This document shows, in pieces, positions 7,851 to 13,509 of a DNA stretch of 64,000 nt (the stretch's first letter is position 1; each line of letters opens with the position of its first letter). The stretch lies in IMG/VR virus record IMGVR_UViG_3300047320_000285, positions 124,001 through 188,000 of that record. The stretch is one strand, 5' to 3'. The position numbers and the translations under genes are program-made. The notes under the pieces are model-generated. The model saw nothing but the letters and a program-made list of their open reading frames with translations. It ran no database searches and was not told the DNA's origin.

Positions 7851-10097
7851 ATGTCCAGTCCGTTTCAACTCCGTGACAAATCCAAGGCCGGCACGATCGG
7901 CCACATGGTCCAACAACTCCACTCGGCGCTGAACCGCTCGGGCGCGTCCTTCGCCAGCAACGCTGCTGTGAAGCGTGTGATCTCGATGGAAGGCCTGAGC
8001 GACACGCAACAGACCGAGTTCACGACTTCGCTCGAGTCGTTGCAACTGTCGATCGGCGAAGTCTCGAAGACTTTCGACGAAGGCAAGGGCAAGTACAAGG
8101 TTGCCACCGAAAGCGGTGAAGAACTGCGTTTCTCGTCGCACACGACGGAAGCTCAGAAGTTCGCCGGTATGGTGGCTGGTATGCTCGCCGCTGACGTGCC
8201 GGGTTTCCTCGGTCGCTCGGTGACGCAGCAACCCGCGATGGAGCAGGGCCAGATGTTCGTCCCGGCATCGGGTGCCGACATGCTCGAGAAGCGCACGCAC
8301 GCGCTCGAAGCATACGACGAGAAGGAAAACAAGGAAACGACCGTGTATTCGGTCGCGTACAACATGCAGGCCGCCACGCAGGACGAGTTCGGCGAAGCGC
8401 TGTTCCCGACCTGTATCGTGACGCCGGACCAGTACGGTCTGACGATCTCGATGCGCCTGATCATGGTGATGGACGACCTGCGCCGCAACGCGTCGGGCGA
8501 AGCCATCCGTGACTTCCAGCGCAAGAACATCATCCGCGCAGCGATCGATCCGGCAGTCCTCCGCAACGATCTGACGAAGATCTTCCCGGTCGTGACCGAC
8601 GACGGCGTGGCACTGGGCAACTTCGTCGACGCTGCACTCGTGCCGCCGCAAACGATCGTCCACGAAGGTCAGTCGATCGAAACGGCACCGCTCGCCATTG
8701 GCGCGCAGTTCGACCTGCTGGGCATCTCGCAAACGGAAGCGCTGCTGCAAACGGGCACGCTCGACACGACCGACGCGATCGACCCGAACATCGTGCTCGG
8801 CGCGCTGTACATGTCGATTCAAGGCACGGTGGCCACGGTTGCCACGACGGAAGTCATCAAGTTCGGTAACGTCGGCCTGATGCAAGGTTCGACGATGACG
8901 GCGGCGCCGCAAGGCAACTACCGTCAGCAAATGCTGAACTTCGTGACGGACTCGCTGGCCGTCAACAAGAACACGGTGCTGAACGACGGCGCGGCTTCGG
9001 CCCTGCTGACCTCGCTGGTTACGGCTGGCGCGCAAGTCAAGCTGGCTGTCACGGTGGGCGGTAACGTCAACCTGCAGACGGCTGAAACGTCGATCTGGTC
9101 GGGCAAGGTTCAAGTCGCGGAAGTGCGTGACGCGAACAACAACGTGCTCGACATGACGACCGGCACGGGTCTGGCGTACAAGAACCTGTTCAACGGCGCG
9201 GTGATCTTCGGTTACGACCTCGACGCACGTCGTGTGAACACGAACCGTCGCGAGCGCGGCCAGCTGCTGGACATCACGTATCAAAACGTGATTTACGGCG
9301 TGCCGCTTCTGTCGCCGATCACGGCACCGCGTCCGCCGGCAGGTCCGCAGCAAGACGAAGCGAACTACTTGGCAGGTCTGATCACGGCAACGCGTATCCG
9401 TACGTCGAACGCCGCAGTCGCCAAGCTGCTCGAAGCTGAAGAAGCGCTGAAGGCATTCGTCACGACGAACCTCGGCGACGACCAGTTCGTCAAGCCGGAA
9501 ATCCTCGGCGTGGGTGGCTGGCTGGTGCAGCCGCAGTACCTGCAAGAAGACTACGCTGCACCGTCGGTCGTCGACAGCATCAAGTCGTACGAACGCGCTG
9601 CTGACATTCAGGCTTCGCTGGTCAACATGATCCGCGAAATGGCCTACCGCATGTACCGCGACTCCGGCTACAAGGCCGCAGCCAACGCGATGCACGGCGG
9701 TATCGCGCCGATGCCGACGGTCATCATCGCAACCGACACGTACATCGCGTCGTACCTGCAGGTGACGGGTGACTTCCGTACGCTCGGTAACGAGTTCAAC
9801 GTGAAGGTCGTGTCGACGACGAACAAGCTGATGAAGGGCAAGATCCGCATCACGTTCGGTGAGTTCGGCGAAGGCAAGGAAAACACCCCGAACCCGCTGC
9901 ACTTCGGCGTGATGGCGTGGAAGCCGGAACTGACGCTGATTCTGCCGACGGTGCGTAACGGTTCGAACAGCCGTGAAATCTCGGTTTCGCCGGCATTCCG
10001 CCACATCGTGAACCTGCCGATCATGGCATCGATCGACGTGTCGGGTATCGACGAAGTCGTGAACGCGAAGGTCGCCGTCAACTTCCACACGATCTGA
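7851..10097 (+). CDS. Major capsid protein precursor (phiKZ gp120-like)
   Basis: ATG 7851 with SD AAGGAAG, 748 aa, very strong codon bias. Propeptide with ISME/SLE/ATE/AME ends at THALE (residue 153), followed by AYDEKENKETTVYSVAYN. C-terminal NPLHFG and PAFRHIVNLPI. Confidence 0.95.
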   Translation: MSSPFQLRDKSKAGTIGHMVQQLHSALNRSGASFASNAAVKRVISMEGLSDTQQTEFTTSLESLQLSIGEVSKTFDEGKGKYKVATESGEELRFSSHTTEAQKFAGMVAGMLAADVPGFLGRSVTQQPAMEQGQMFVPASGADMLEKRTHALEAYDEKENKETTVYSVAYNMQAATQDEFGEALFPTCIVTPDQYGLTISMRLIMVMDDLRRNASGEAIRDFQRKNIIRAAIDPAVLRNDLTKIFPVVTDDGVALGNFVDAALVPPQTIVHEGQSIETAPLAIGAQFDLLGISQTEALLQTGTLDTTDAIDPNIVLGALYMSIQGTVATVATTEVIKFGNVGLMQGSTMTAAPQGNYRQQMLNFVTDSLAVNKNTVLNDGAASALLTSLVTAGAQVKLAVTVGGNVNLQTAETSIWSGKVQVAEVRDANNNVLDMTTGTGLAYKNLFNGAVIFGYDLDARRVNTNRRERGQLLDITYQNVIYGVPLLSPITAPRPPAGPQQDEANYLAGLITATRIRTSNAAVAKLLEAEEALKAFVTTNLGDDQFVKPEILGVGGWLVQPQYLQEDYAAPSVVDSIKSYERAADIQASLVNMIREMAYRMYRDSGYKAAANAMHGGIAPMPTVIIATDTYIASYLQVTGDFRTLGNEFNVKVVSTTNKLMKGKIRITFGEFGEGKENTPNPLHFGVMAWKPELTLILPTVRNGSNSREISVSPAFRHIVNLPIMASIDVSGIDEVVNAKVAVNFHTI

Positions 10098-10105
10098 GGG
10101 AATAG

Positions 10106-10211
10106 CTTAGTCACGGTGACAGACTTGAGCGGCTTCCGGGAGTACTCCGCAGGGAGTTCCTGAAGTCAATGGGTCTGTCTGAAATAGGGGGCAGACCCAC
10201 CGTGACCTAAG
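10106..10211 (+). ncRNA. Candidate structured RNA (three-way junction) just after the capsid stop
   Basis: P1 CTTAGTCACGGT (10106-17) pairs with ACCGTGACCTAAG (10199-211). P2 10133-148/10153-165 has a GCAG loop. P3 GGGTCTGTC/GGCAGACCC (10171-79/10190-98). Confidence 0.4.
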
Positions 10212-10245
10212 GTGACTCTCAGCGGTAAGGCTTGTGGTTGGGGCT

Positions 10246-10294
10246 GTCCCACTCCCTCGGGTCTTCGGACTCGGGGGGTGTGGGACTTTATGCC
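10246..10294 (+). terminator. Capsid operon terminator: long stem with cUUCGg loop then TTTATGCC
   Basis: GTCCCACTCCCTCGGGTC-TTCG-GACTCGGGGGGTGTGGGAC-TTTATGCC. Confidence 0.7.
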
Positions 10295-10317
10295 TGTAAA
10301 TTTTCTATCGCATGTTC

Positions 10318-10407
10318 TATGATCTGGAGGCAGTGCGCGAGTGCTGTCTTGCAGGGATCCGAAGGTAGACGGGAGCCTCACGGTTTCCGTCTACTGGGTG
10401 TTATGCC
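10318..10407 (+). ncRNA. Candidate small late RNA: TATG, GNRA hairpin, second hairpin, TTATGCC
   Basis: TATG 10318-21; stem 10327-36/10341-50 with GCGA loop; stem GTAGACGGGAGCC/GGTTTCCGTCTAC 10365-94; TTATGCC 10401-07; no credible ORF. Confidence 0.35.
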
Positions 10408-10430
10408 GTTGCTGCATTTATTTTTGGCAA

Positions 10431-10438
10431 TATATTAC
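10431..10438 (+). promoter_or_regulatory. phiKZ-type early (virion RNAP) promoter TATATTAC
   Basis: Exact match to the established phiKZ early consensus, preceded by an AT tract (TTTATTTTT). Lies 73 nt upstream of the operon leading to an nvRNAP subunit, which must be expressed early. Confidence 0.6.
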
Positions 10439-10510
10439 CAACTAGCATGAGAAGAGCCGGTAACAAGCTGGCCTGATAAGTTAAGCCGTGCAAGCTGTAG
10501 GAGTTTTGCC

Positions 10511-11713
10511 ATGAGTGCCCATTTTGGCCAGAACGTTTTCTTCGGCGCTCCGATTGTACGAGTAGGCGTGTATCCTGCTGAACGTGCGTACGATCTTTCT
10601 CCTGTGGAAATCAAGCAGGAGTTTATCAACGAGCTGCATGAGAACGTCACCATCGTGCTAAGGAATGGGTTGCCCTTTCAGATTCGCGGCAAGAAAGGAC
10701 AAGCCCGCCGAAGACTGACGGTCAATTACACCATCGTTATCAGTGGTGAAGCGGTACATGAGACTGCGAACGTGCTCGCTCAGATCACTTCCCGCAGTCC
10801 GGTGACTATGCGCATCCTGAAGGAGGCTTATGAATCCCACGCAAGGAATTATTCGCCCAACCAACCGATCGTACTCAAACTTGAGTACATCATCACCCGC
10901 GAGGAGTTGAGAAAATACGGCAATTCCCTCTATCATCACGGATTGGATTGCTGGATCAGTACTACCGAGAGCACCAACTACGCAGTGCATCCGTATTCCG
11001 AAGAGGGCATGCTGCAAGGCACGATCTGGAATAACACACCCGATGCAGTCAAAGGTGGGGGTGCGTTGTATGCCGTGGAGATTGTCGATAACCTCGGCAC
11101 GTTTGGCGATCGGTATCTGAATATTGCCAACGAGATCTATCCGGTTCGGGCCAAGAAAGATGCCAAGCGCACCGATGGCGTGTATATCACGCGCACGTTA
11201 CCGAGCGAAGGGGAGTTGGGACGCGGGGAGATTGTGGCAGCGCATTGGCCGTTTAACAAGGCCGATGGTGCAGACTTCGATTTCACTGAGTTCCATCTGT
11301 ATCGGACTTTCACCGATGCCAAGACGCTGGGCGACATTGCGTCGGCCCGCAAGGCGGAGTTGCAGAGCAAAGATCACGAGCTGCAGCTCGGGCGCAAAGA
11401 ACTGGAGGCACTCAAACAGGAGGCGGAACGGAACAAGGCGGACTTCGACAGGGATAAACAAGCGCAAGAACGTGAGAACCAGCGCCTGCAACAGGAGATC
11501 ACTGAAAAGGATCGCCGGTATAAGGAGCTAGAAGTTGAGCGCGAGCGCATCAAGCATGAGTTGGAGTTGGAAAGAATGCGCAAGAAGGATCAGTACGAGG
11601 AACGGTCATCCAAGCGTAAGGATACGAGCGAGATGGTGAAGATCTTACCTGCCTTGATACTGGGGGCAGCCGCGATTATCACCACGCTTATCAGCGTGAC
11701 AAGGTCTAAGTAG
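10511..11713 (+). CDS. Conserved protein with long coiled coil and C-terminal TM anchor (phiKZ gp122-like position)
   Basis: SD AGGAG. E/K/R-rich heptads in the last ~130 aa, then ILPALILGAAAIITTLISV. Confidence 0.8.
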   Translation: MSAHFGQNVFFGAPIVRVGVYPAERAYDLSPVEIKQEFINELHENVTIVLRNGLPFQIRGKKGQARRRLTVNYTIVISGEAVHETANVLAQITSRSPVTMRILKEAYESHARNYSPNQPIVLKLEYIITREELRKYGNSLYHHGLDCWISTTESTNYAVHPYSEEGMLQGTIWNNTPDAVKGGGALYAVEIVDNLGTFGDRYLNIANEIYPVRAKKDAKRTDGVYITRTLPSEGELGRGEIVAAHWPFNKADGADFDFTEFHLYRTFTDAKTLGDIASARKAELQSKDHELQLGRKELEALKQEAERNKADFDRDKQAQERENQRLQQEITEKDRRYKELEVERERIKHELELERMRKKDQYEERSSKRKDTSEMVKILPALILGAAAIITTLISVTRSK

Positions 11714-11856: not shown

Positions 11857-13509
11857 ATGGACGCAGAACTGGCACGGCTCATAGCCCAGGAAACACCGGA
11901 CCTCAACCCGGATTTGGCCAACGGGTTAGCAGTCAAGCATATCCCGGATGTGGAGCCGTATATTGACTCCATCTTCCGGGCGCTGCAAAAGGGATTTCCG
12001 GATGGGTTTTCTTACGTCACCTCCACCCGTTGCGGGCCACAGGGTGACTTTGATGAGCTGACCAAGAAGAAGAACGGCAGTAAGCGGTACTACGATGTGG
12101 CGACCAGCCAACTGTTCATGACGATGCTGGTGTTCAAGTATCGGGGTGAAGAGATCCGGCGGCCACTGCAACTGCCTTATGTGGAAGACGCAGGGGTCAT
12201 CTACTTGGGCGGTTCGCGGTTTGTGATCTCGCCGGTGCTCTCTGACCGGGTAATGTCAGTGGACCTGAACAGTATCTTTATCCGCTTTAACCGGGGTAAG
12301 GTGACCTTCGAGCGCTCACCGCAGTATTTCCGCGCGAACGACGTGCAGGAAACGGTGGACGTGGTACACGGCAAGATCTATAACCGTCCCACCAAACAGA
12401 CCGGCACAGCCAAGCCCACCGTCAAAGGTAACACGACGCTGGTGCATTATCTGTTCTGCAAGTTTGGGGTGCATGAAACGTTTGAACGGTTCGCTGGCAC
12501 GGTGCCGGTATTTGGCGATGCGGAGACGGTCAATCATCACACGCATCCGCAGGATCAGTGGGTGATCTGCGAAAGCAGCGGTATCAAGCCGCGCGGCGTT
12601 GGCGACAAGATCTGGGTGCCCAGCCCGATTCGACTCGCTGTGCGTCGTGATCAGTACACGGCCACGATGAAGAATTATATCGCTGGTCTGTACTATATCC
12701 TCGATCACTTCCCCCGTCGCGTGGAGCTGAATCAGTTCACCGACGAGAAGTTCCGCAATCACACGGGCCGCTGGCGCGTGCTGATGGGCTATCTGATCTT
12801 TGGTGGTAACATCATGGAAGGTCACCTGCATGATAACGTGACGGATCACATCGGCAGTCTCGATGAGTACGTTGACGAAATCATGCGCGTGAAGTTCCGC
12901 GAGATCAAAGTCCCGGTAGAAGACATCTACCAGTTCTTCGGCATCCTGATCGAGCGCTTTAACCAGTGGTTGCTCGATGGGGCGGACAAGATCAACAGCC
13001 TCTATGACAAGGAACTCGGTGTTCTGTATTACGTCATGGAAGATGTCACGATCATGATCAACACGTTCTATTTCAAGTTGATCGCCAGTGCCAAGAGCAA
13101 GCGGGAAATGGGTAAGGACTTGAAAAAGGACGACATCGTCGACCTGATGAACAAGTTCCTGCGCCCCGGGAAGATCTACTCGGTCACCAAGATGCACCAA
13201 GAGGTGTCGACCACTTCGTGCTCGGGTGACAACAAGGCATTCAAAATCACCTCGATGATGGTGCCTCAAGCCAAGACCTCGCGACGCGCGGGTCGTTCTG
13301 ACAGCGGCGCGATGACCGATCCGGCTAAGATTCTCCACACCTCCGTGGCCGAGATTGGCGGGTATGCCAACATGCCCAAGAGTGATCCGTCGGGTCACTC
13401 ACGGATCAATCTGTACGCGCAGATCGATCGTTTTGGGGTGGTGCTCCAGAATCCGGAGCTGGTGTCGATCCTCAAGCCGACCGAGGAAATGATCCGTCGC
13501 AAGCAGTAA
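11857..13509 (+). CDS. Non-virion RNA polymerase beta subunit, N-terminal part (phiKZ gp123-like)
   Basis: 550 aa. LQLPYVEDAGVIYLGGSRFVISPVLSD matches the RpoB N-terminal LPx(n)GxFIINGxERV region. Synteny after the capsid gene. Confidence 0.85.
   Translation: MDAELARLIAQETPDLNPDLANGLAVKHIPDVEPYIDSIFRALQKGFPDGFSYVTSTRCGPQGDFDELTKKKNGSKRYYDVATSQLFMTMLVFKYRGEEIRRPLQLPYVEDAGVIYLGGSRFVISPVLSDRVMSVDLNSIFIRFNRGKVTFERSPQYFRANDVQETVDVVHGKIYNRPTKQTGTAKPTVKGNTTLVHYLFCKFGVHETFERFAGTVPVFGDAETVNHHTHPQDQWVICESSGIKPRGVGDKIWVPSPIRLAVRRDQYTATMKNYIAGLYYILDHFPRRVELNQFTDEKFRNHTGRWRVLMGYLIFGGNIMEGHLHDNVTDHIGSLDEYVDEIMRVKFREIKVPVEDIYQFFGILIERFNQWLLDGADKINSLYDKELGVLYYVMEDVTIMINTFYFKLIASAKSKREMGKDLKKDDIVDLMNKFLRPGKIYSVTKMHQEVSTTSCSGDNKAFKITSMMVPQAKTSRRAGRSDSGAMTDPAKILHTSVAEIGGYANMPKSDPSGHSRINLYAQIDRFGVVLQNPELVSILKPTEEMIRRKQ

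What the first reader, a model, noticed from the sequence alone, without database searches (positions are those of the whole stretch)
10318..10407. Self-contained ~87-nt non-coding transcription unit (candidate late sRNA)
Seen: immediately after the capsid terminator come TATG (late-promoter core), a 10-bp stem with a GCGA (GNRA) tetraloop, a 13-bp hairpin, and the phage-specific TTATGCC terminator flank, just before the early promoter of the next operon. There is no credible ORF. A second terminator-type element is otherwise redundant here. Inference: a phage sRNA (anti-defence decoy, regulator or structural RNA). Together with the three-way junction this makes the only large non-coding island in the window.
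Basis: partly seen in the sequence, partly recalled or inferred. Interest (0 to 1): 0.7.

Follow-up and report, generated by a model that had tools for sequence, protein, structure and literature searches.

The report
Accessory two-hairpin RNA cassette after capsid gene
Between the capsid gene and the next operon of an uncultivated phiKZ-like jumbo phage lies a 113-base optional cassette that folds into two conserved RNA hairpins, the second a standard phage terminator; it is a plausible small late RNA of a kind already described in phiKZ, but no transcript has been seen.

Summary
The sequence features are real. TATG is at 10318-10321. A 10-bp hairpin with a GCGA loop (P2) is at 10327-10350. 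A 14+4-bp hairpin (P3) is at 10357-10399, followed by TTATGCC at 10401-10407. An ATATATTAC early promoter follows at 10430-10438.

The window comes from a 254-kb rhizosphere jumbo phage related to Burkholderia phage FLC9 and Ralstonia phage RP12. "Hairpin + TTATGCCGT" is not specific to this phage: it matches the published phiKZ terminator motif. It also normally sits about 30 nt upstream of this genome's early promoters, so the second terminator is not redundant.

Positions 10295-10407 form a 113-nt indel bounded by two TTATGCC repeats. Close relatives in four soil samples lack it exactly, one relative carries a diverged version, and FLC9-like phages carry a homologous module. Both hairpins are kept through compensatory and G·U changes across 8 sequences, which indicates a structured RNA on the + strand.

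An own promoter is only circumstantial: TATG is not conserved in the FLC9 group, and no RNA data exist. No Rfam family matches and no ORF is credible.

Verdict: a new member of a known kind, namely the short terminator-bounded RNAs of phiKZ-like phages. It is dispensable, its function is untested, and the interest is moderate to low.

The parts
7851..10097 (+). Major head (capsid) protein gene; its transcript runs into the element
   Evidence: phrog_3231 major head protein, E = 1e-184. 76% nt identity to the FLC9 capsid gene. Same gene order in FLC9, RP12 and FLC1-1B.
10095..10221 (+). Three-way-junction fold in the capsid 3'UTR (context, not part of the cassette)
   Evidence: Fold. In close relatives there is one compensatory pair (10172 G>A with 10197 C>T) and four wobble-preserving changes.
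10246..10294 (+). Capsid terminator T1: 18-bp hairpin (10246-10286) plus TTTATGCC (10287-10294). Its TTATGCC is the left direct repeat of the indel.
   Evidence: -32.4 kcal/mol, 18 pairs. One of the longest terminator stems in the genome, where the median is 10.5 pairs.
10295..10407 (+). The 113-nt accessory cassette. It is absent from close relatives and bounded by TTATGCC at 10288-10294 and 10401-10407.
   Evidence: Contigs of runs X2, X4, X5 and X6 join 10294 to 10430 through a 22-nt spacer homologous to 10408-10429. The source run X1 carries the cassette with no heterogeneity. A covariance model built from FLC9-like modules hits 10286-10412.
10296..10321 (+). Promoter-like stretch: GTAAATT (10296-10302) and TATG (10318-10321). 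A putative start would be at G10321.
   Evidence: phiKZ late promoters are TATG with the start at G, and middle promoters carry an A-rich/TTAC box near -22 (PMC4666361, PMC8244752). The same spacing of GTAAATT to TATG recurs at genome position 232065. TATG is not conserved in the FLC9 group. This is inference only.
10327..10350 (+). P2: 10-bp hairpin with a GNRA (GCGA) tetraloop
   Evidence: The FLC9-like homologues keep a stem with a GCAA loop. 4 pairs show changes on both sides and 3 vary on one side only (G·U to G-C/A-U changes), which fits RNA on the + strand only.
10357..10399 (+). P3: long hairpin (4 bp + GAA bulge + 14 bp, loop UCAC); the stem of terminator T2
   Evidence: -25 kcal/mol, 18 pairs. 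In 8 homologues 9 of 10 pairs change on both sides.
10400..10409 (+). Terminator flank G-TTATGCC-GT of T2; right direct repeat of the indel
   Evidence: Matches the phiKZ terminator consensus YTTATKYYGT (PMC10914365). Invariant in all homologues.
10410..10438 (+). T-rich spacer and early promoter core ATATATTAC (10430-10438) of the downstream operon
   Evidence: ATATTAC sites with the same context occur about 10 times on the + strand. The distance from TTATGCC to ATATTAC is 31 nt here and 30 nt at three other sites. phiKZ early promoters are described as an extended -10 box with a T-rich motif upstream (PMC8244752).
10511..13509 (+). Downstream early operon: 400-aa protein (10511-11713) and RNA polymerase beta-like subunit (11857-13509)
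   Evidence: phrog_7727 and phrog_2943 'polymerase', E = 7e-144. RP12 and FLC1-1B annotate the homologue as RNA polymerase beta subunit.

Best explanation
Positions 10295-10407 are an optional non-coding cassette sitting between the capsid terminator T1 and the terminator-early promoter cassette of the next operon.

On the + strand it specifies a compact RNA: a GNRA-capped hairpin (P2) followed by a long hairpin that is a phiKZ-type intrinsic terminator (P3/T2, UUAUGCC).

The mechanism I consider most likely is this. Late in infection the phage's non-virion RNA polymerase starts at or near G10321 (TATG, with an A/T-rich GTAAATT box about 22 nt upstream). Most transcripts stop at T2 and yield an RNA of about 85 nt. 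This is the same 'promoter followed at once by a terminator' arrangement that gives short abundant RNAs in phiKZ and 201phi2-1. The minority that reads through T2 would add late transcription of the polymerase-subunit operon.

The cassette was gained or lost by recombination between copies of the conserved terminator flank TTATGCC.

Shown: the structure, its conservation, the terminator motif, the indel and the absence of coding potential. Inferred: the promoter, the RNA ends and any function.
For: - Fold is stronger than shuffles (z = -4.2).
- Homologous module at the same locus in FLC9 and in 10 IMG/VR or JGI contigs (9 IMG/VR plus one JGI), giving 7 distinct sequences.
- A covariance model built without the window finds 10286-10412 as its only additional hit in 271 kb (17.7 bits, E about 0.6).
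- 96% of pair cells are paired against 40-54% when partners are slid. 13 pairs change on both sides against 5 or fewer in controls, and 0 of 500 shuffles reach this.
- The G·U content of both stems places the structure on the + strand.
- T2 matches the published phiKZ terminator motif (PMC10914365).
- The genome uses hairpin + YTATGCC at about 42-60 sites.
- phiKZ late promoters are TATG with the start at G.
- GTAAATT lies 22-23 nt before TATG here and at a second intergenic site whose homologue in an FLC9-like genome has the same layout.
- In L006-like phages two terminators precede the module, so read-through alone would supply little RNA.
- Short RNAs bounded by a promoter and a terminator are documented in phiKZ and 201phi2-1.
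- The indel is exact and lies between the TTATGCC repeats.
Against: - There are no transcript data. No RNA run was listed, and the one run labelled RNA (X19) is flagged as probably DNA and did not cover the region.
- TATG is a 4-mer. In the FLC9 group the same position reads TATC, TATTG or AATG.
- The conserved block GTATCTATTGAGG is not repeated elsewhere in FLC9-like genomes, so it does not behave as a promoter class.
- The association of GTAA[AT]T with TATG is no more frequent than for control 4-mers.
- In the window the box reads GTAAATTTTCTATC, not ...TTAC.
- Four samples hold close relatives without the cassette, so any function is dispensable.
- The covariance-model hit is marginal, and the pair counts come from a structure-fitted alignment.
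Confidence: 0.42

Rival explanations
1. The cassette has no promoter of its own. It is the tail of a read-through capsid transcript. T2 is a back-up terminator and insulator in front of the early promoter. P2 and P3 act as 3' stabilising hairpins, and cleavage in the AU-rich stretch 10295-10326 may release a 3'UTR-derived small RNA.
For: - The capsid gene is the most heavily transcribed late gene, and T1 and T2 are among the longest terminator stems in the genome.
- FLC9-like phages stack 3-4 TTATGCC terminators here.
- A terminator about 30 nt before ATATTAC is the rule in this genome.
- 3'UTR-derived phage RNAs without their own start site are known, for example PAK_P3 ncRNA1 and ncRNA2.
- No robust promoter signal was found.
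Against: - T1 alone does the job in the module-less relatives, so a second terminator is not needed for insulation.
- P2 is not a terminator, yet it is kept by compensatory change.
- In L006-like phages two terminators lie upstream of the module.
Confidence: 0.3
2. The cassette is a decaying remnant. It is either a duplicated terminator-early promoter cassette or an emptied 'moron' slot, and it has no function of its own. The locus is simply a hot spot for cassette shuffling at TTATGCC repeats.
For: - After T1's TTATGCC the sequence parallels the real early-promoter spacer: an A/T run, then TAT, 24-26 nt after the repeat in both.
- Other relatives carry unrelated insertions at this junction (L017, L036, L042).
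- Presence and absence vary among near-identical phages.
- The 5' half is mosaic: L040 and L006 are 97% identical in the capsid gene and 100% in P3, but 74-79% in the 5' half.
Against: Both hairpins persist across phages whose capsid proteins are only 57-58% identical, with compensatory substitutions. That is not expected of neutral debris.
Confidence: 0.15
3. P2 is a cis-acting RNA signal, in the manner of lambda nut boxB or HK022 put. It would modify the phage RNA polymerase so that it reads through T2 into the polymerase-subunit operon late in infection.
For: - P2 is a GNRA-capped hairpin placed directly upstream of a terminator.
- The authors of the 201phi2-1 study proposed antitermination for long-stem terminators in that phage.
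Against: - There is a single copy per genome.
- The P2 sequence differs completely between the window and the FLC9 group apart from its shape.
- No boxA-like partner was identified.
- Module-less relatives express the operon without it.
Confidence: 0.07

Closest known systems
phiKZ-type intrinsic terminators (hairpin + TTAT; consensus BCCYCCCCHWWDGGGRRGGBYTTATKYYGT; Putzeys et al. 2024, PMC10914365; similar motif A in 201phi2-1, PMC11512511)
   Same: T1 and T2 are GC-rich hairpins followed at once by TTATGCC(GT). The motif recurs at about 40-60 sites, mostly at gene ends, and is often palindromic (GGCATAA-hairpin-TTATGCC) between convergent genes.
   Different: The stems of T1 and T2 have 18 pairs, against a genome median of 10.5. 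Termination at these sites has not been measured in this phage.
Short promoter-proximal-terminated RNAs of phiKZ and 201phi2-1 (for example the 71-nt RNA from P112 to T102, the 141-nt TU237, and 201phi2-1 sRNA005)
   Same: A promoter-like sequence is followed within about 85 nt by a strong terminator. The RNA is highly structured, has no ORF, and keeps its structure in related phages at the same locus.
   Different: There is no sequence homology and no transcript evidence. The element lies after the capsid gene and upstream of an early promoter rather than in a mapped 5'UTR. It is absent from the closest relatives.
3'UTR-derived phage small RNAs (PAK_P3 ncRNA1 and ncRNA2; Chevallereau 2016, as cited in PMC10914365)
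   Same: It lies downstream of a highly expressed late gene, is structured, and could arise by processing without its own start site.
   Different: Here a complete terminator (T1) separates it from the gene.
PeSL (promoter-early stem-loop) mobile regulatory cassettes of T4-type phages (Arbiol et al. 2010; recalled from memory, not checked here)
   Same: Repeated stem-loop/early-promoter units flank variable inserts, and recombination between them creates presence/absence polymorphism.
   Different: Here the order is stem-loop then promoter, the shared repeat is the 7-nt terminator flank, and the insert is non-coding.
Lambda nut (boxB) and HK022 put antitermination RNAs
   Same: One or two hairpins, one with a GNRA-type loop, lie upstream of a terminator.
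   Different: There is no boxA, no second copy and no conserved sequence. The second hairpin is itself the terminator. No test was possible.

Membership tests
phiKZ-type intrinsic terminator | GC-rich stem-loop followed at once by TTATKYYGT | tested here: met
   T2: the stem ends at 10399, followed by G and then TTATGCCGT at 10401-10409. Consensus taken from PMC10914365.
phiKZ-type intrinsic terminator | The motif recurs genome-wide at the 3' ends of transcription units | tested here: met
   75 YTATGCC sites. 42 follow a hairpin of -14 kcal/mol or better within 3 nt, against 15% of random positions. Under the looser criterion (61 hairpin-bearing sites), 37 lie within 150 nt downstream of a same-strand ORF.
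phiKZ-type intrinsic terminator | Transcript 3' ends map to the TTAT tract | not testable with these tools
   No RNA run holds this sequence.
Independent small RNA gene | Own promoter and primary 5' end | tested here: inconclusive
   TATG and an upstream GTAAATT box are present with the same spacing as at genome position 232065. However, TATG is not conserved in the FLC9 group, the conserved block is not a repeated motif, and the association is not above that of control 4-mers.
Independent small RNA gene | Secondary structure conserved with covariation | tested here: met
   P2 has 4 pairs and P3 has 9 pairs with changes on both sides. 96% of cells are paired against 40-54% in slid controls. 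The alignment is fitted to the model, so the counts lean towards the structure.
Independent small RNA gene | No conserved ORF | tested here: met
   No Pfam or PHROG hit. Indels of 1-5 nt occur and no start codon is shared among the homologues.
Independent small RNA gene | Conserved in close relatives | tested here: not met
   The cassette is precisely absent from relatives with 87-96% identical flanks in runs X2, X4, X5 and X6. It is diverged in X7.
Base-pairing regulatory sRNA | Conserved single-stranded seed and a predicted target | tested here: not met
   Only about 6 nt at the 5' end and a partly paired 13-nt linker are unpaired. The duplex with the downstream 5'UTR is no better than shuffles in 7 genomes (z from -1.2 to +0.7).
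Any Rfam family | Covariance-model match | tested here: not met
   No hit on 10286-10412 even at E up to 10. The only nearby hit is a chance raiA-hairpin match on the minus strand of T1 (E = 7.4).
phiKZ late promoter | TATG at -3 to +1, needed for initiation by the non-virion RNA polymerase | tested here: inconclusive
   The motif is present at 10318-10321, but it is a 4-mer with 691 copies in the genome. Initiation cannot be tested here.
nut/put-type antitermination RNA | Hairpin signal plus a conserved linear box, acting on downstream terminators | not tested
   Only the presence of a GNRA hairpin upstream of T2 is established.

The most novel reading that the evidence does not exclude
The cassette is a small RNA 'moron'. 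It would be a self-contained unit of promoter, hairpin and terminator that moves among jumbo-phage genomes by recombination at the universal terminator flank TTATGCC. Its fast-changing but always-folded RNA would act as a protein-binding decoy or as a modifier of the phage polymerase (nut/put-like), under diversifying pressure.
Probability: 0.1. Interest if true: 0.65.

Novelty: new member of a known kind. Interest (0 to 1): 0.35.

Why it matters
If transcribed, this would add a conserved, structured small RNA to the few known in nucleus-forming jumbo phages. It is present in a cultured phage (Burkholderia phage FLC9), so it can be tested directly.

The exact presence/absence polymorphism between TTATGCC repeats also shows how the conserved terminator flank can serve as a recombination point for shuffling small regulatory cassettes.

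Neither point changes current understanding. Short terminator-bounded RNAs and this terminator motif are already described for phiKZ and 201phi2-1.

Tried and rejected
- Rfam scan at E up to 10: nothing on the element.
- Near and distant BLAST of the region against phage records: only chance matches on the cassette itself.
- Searches with single proteins (the downstream 400-aa protein; the capsid C-terminus) in viral and metagenome contigs: no relatives found.
- Pattern scans: one module per genome and only one extra metagenome copy, L075.
- RNA evidence: run X19, labelled RNA-Seq, is flagged as probably DNA and covers only coding parts. No RNA run was listed for 10240-10440.
- Promoter-class test: GTATCTATTGAGG is not enriched over its reversed control in FLC9 or in a 311-kb relative. 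GTAAATTCTTAC is only slightly enriched.
- GTAA[AT]T upstream of TATG: 5 sites, all intergenic, but the rate equals that of control 4-mers.
- A closing helix GGCGUAAA/UUUAUGCC, proposed by RNAalifold, shows no compensatory change.
- Pairing of the cassette RNA with the downstream early 5'UTR is not better than shuffles.
- MITE-like reading (7-bp direct repeats taken as a target duplication): rejected. There are no terminal inverted repeats, and the repeat is the functional terminator flank.
- Small ORFs, including ATG 10319: no ribosome-binding site, and not conserved.
- tRNA or tmRNA: none in the window.

Full report
**Origin and context.** The window is bases 124001-188000 of a 253,740-bp IMG/VR virus record with direct terminal repeats, from a rhizosphere metagenome. 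Its nearest named relatives are Burkholderia phage FLC9 (capsid gene 76% nt identity) and Ralstonia phages RP12, RP31 and FLC1-1B. All of them share one gene order: DnaB helicase (-), a small gene, the major head gene, a gap, a protein of about 390 aa, and an RNA polymerase beta-like subunit. PHROG matches confirm the major head protein (7851-10097) and the polymerase subunit (11857-13509). This is therefore a phiKZ-like jumbo phage that carries its own multisubunit RNA polymerases.

**Observation.**
- T1: hairpin 10246-10286 plus TTTATGCC.
- TATG: 10318-10321.
- P2: 10-bp stem with a GCGA loop, 10327-10350.
- P3: 14 bp plus a 4-bp extension, loop UCAC, 10357-10399.
- TTATGCC: 10401-10407.
- ATATATTAC: 10430-10438.

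The 90-nt stretch folds at -43.2 kcal/mol against -29.2 for shuffles, z = -4.2. The overlapping ORFs match no protein family, and no Rfam family matches even at E = 10.

**The terminator flank is known.** Hairpin + YTATGCC is a genome-wide signal. TTTATGCC occurs 30 times against about 5 expected. 42 of 75 YTATGCC sites follow a strong hairpin, against 15% of random positions. Many sites are palindromic (GGCATAA-hairpin-TTATGCC) between convergent genes. The flank matches the terminator consensus mapped by ONT-cappable-seq in phiKZ (...YTTATKYYGT; PMC10914365) and seen again in 201phi2-1 (PMC11512511). It is therefore a family trait and not specific to this phage.

**The second terminator is not redundant.** In this genome 7 of 10 promoter-like ATATTAC sites have TATGCC 25-36 nt upstream, and four of them lie at 30-31 nt. 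T2 lies 31 nt before ATATTAC. A terminator abutting the early promoter is the normal cassette.

**The unit is an indel.** Contigs from four soil samples in two studies (runs X2, X4, X5, X6) are 87-96% identical to the flanks. All of them join 10294 directly to 10430 through a 22-nt spacer (GTTATTGTATTTGTTTTCAGTG or GTTGCTGTATTTGTTTTCAGTG). That spacer is homologous to window 10408-10429. The difference is therefore exactly 10295-10407, 113 nt, lying between two copies of TTATGCC. In those relatives T1 itself serves as the terminator of the early-promoter cassette. Run X1, probably the source sample, carries the cassette with no heterogeneity. Run X7 holds a relative with 93-94% identical flanks whose cassette interior is too diverged to align at 80%. 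It still shows a hairpin with the CCTCAC loop start. The cassette is thus dispensable and changes faster than its surroundings.

**Homologues.** FLC9 and 10 contigs (9 IMG/VR plus one JGI), seven distinct sequences in all, carry a module at the same locus. It consists of a conserved box GTAAATTCTTAC, a variable spacer, TATCTATTGAGG, a hairpin with a GCAA loop, a linker, a long and highly variable hairpin, and TTATGCCGT. RP12, FLC1-1B and more distant relatives lack it. A covariance model built from the seven FLC9-like sequences alone finds window 10286-10412 as its only further hit in 271 kb (17.7 bits, E about 0.6). The score is marginal, but the hit lies at the syntenic place.

On the resulting 8-sequence alignment, 96% of pair cells are standard pairs, against 40-54% when the partners are slid. 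13 pairs change on both sides (4 in P2, 9 in P3), and no shuffle of 500 reaches these values. The alignment is fitted to the structure, so the counts lean towards it. Many of the pairs are G·U, which fits RNA read from the + strand only. A proposed closing helix (GGCGUAAA/UUUAUGCC) shows no compensatory change. Within the FLC9 group the P2 block is about as conserved as capsid third codon positions, and P3 is far less conserved. L040 is mosaic: 97% identical to L006 in the capsid gene and 100% in P3, but 74-79% in the 5' half of the module.

**Is there a promoter?** phiKZ late promoters are TATG with the start at G (PMC4666361). Middle promoters have an A-rich/TTAC(T) box near -22 (PMC4666361, PMC8244752). 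In the window, GTAAATT lies 22-23 nt before TATG. The same layout occurs at genome position 232065 and at its homologue in an FLC9-like genome (GTAAATTYTTAC-N11-12-TATGGTATAG). GTAAAT also precedes the TATG upstream of the capsid operon.

Against a promoter:
- The FLC9 group has TATC, TATTG or AATG at the aligned position.
- GTATCTATTGAGG is unique in those genomes.
- The association of GTAA[AT]T with TATG is no more frequent than for control 4-mers.
- The window's box has lost TTAC.

Both the late and the middle model place a start within about 6 nt of the base of P2, but this remains inference. In L006-like phages two terminators precede the module. That makes supply by read-through alone less likely.

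**Function.** Very little of the RNA is single-stranded, and its pairing with the downstream early 5'UTR is no better than chance in seven genomes. A classical base-pairing regulator is therefore unlikely. The architecture equals that of the short, abundant, terminator-bounded RNAs reported for phiKZ (17 candidates, two confirmed by Northern blot) and for 201phi2-1 (11 candidates). I take this as the best model (0.42): late initiation near G10321, termination at T2, and minor read-through into the polymerase-subunit operon. The rivals are:
- a read-through 3'UTR tail or back-up terminator (0.30);
- a decaying cassette remnant (0.15), which the compensatory evolution argues against;
- a nut/put-like signal (0.07).

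**Verdict.** It is a new member of a known kind. The most useful outcome is that the homologous module in the cultured phage FLC9 can be tested directly.

Noticed in passing
window 10238-10246; also L001, L006-L008, L015, L017, L019, L020 just 5' of the capsid terminator hairpin: The motif (T)TGGGGCTG directly precedes the capsid terminator hairpin in very distant relatives, including AT-rich ones, although the hairpins themselves differ. It looks like a conserved 3'UTR signal of unknown role.
   Followed up: partly
window 10095-10221: The three-way-junction fold right after the capsid stop codon is kept in close relatives. They show one compensatory pair (10172 G>A with 10197 C>T), four wobble-preserving changes and two disruptive ones.
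   Followed up: partly
genome-wide; in the window e.g. 10401-10438; outside it genome 8172-8214, 109930-109966, 116710-116746, 197986-198022: Early-promoter-like ATATTAC sites are preceded at a nearly fixed 30-31 nt by hairpin + YTATGCC. Together they form a repeated terminator-early promoter cassette. Downstream, a conserved TG lies 5-7 nt after ATATTAC.
   Followed up: partly
L001:5013-5065, L007, L008, L006, L075 (between T1 and the module): FLC9-like phages have an extra conserved stretch of about 45 nt that the window lacks. It is a direct repeat GTCARAAGKTG x2 flanking a small palindrome, and could be a protein-binding site.
   Followed up: no
L040:5421-5545 versus L006:5443-5570: The module is mosaic. 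The capsid gene is 97% and P3 100% identical, but the promoter-like box and P2 are only 74-79% identical. This suggests recombination inside the module.
   Followed up: partly
whole genome (G000): TATG is about two-fold under-represented (691 copies against about 1440 expected from base composition). CCTATG, GTCCTAT and TTATGAY are enriched in intergenic DNA. These could be features of the late promoter.
   Followed up: no
window 11857-13509: The gene two positions downstream is the RNA polymerase beta-like subunit. From the gene order alone (capsid, one gene, then polymerase subunit, as I recall it for phiKZ gp120-gp123; not compared directly) it may correspond to phiKZ GP123, which a 2026 structure shows reading the TATG promoter motif (PMC12809450). 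The capsid late unit and a polymerase-subunit operon are thus immediate neighbours.
   Followed up: no
L017, L018, L036, L042 downstream of the capsid terminator: Other relatives carry unrelated insertions of 300-600 nt at the same capsid/early-operon junction. This indicates a hot spot for insertions.
   Followed up: no
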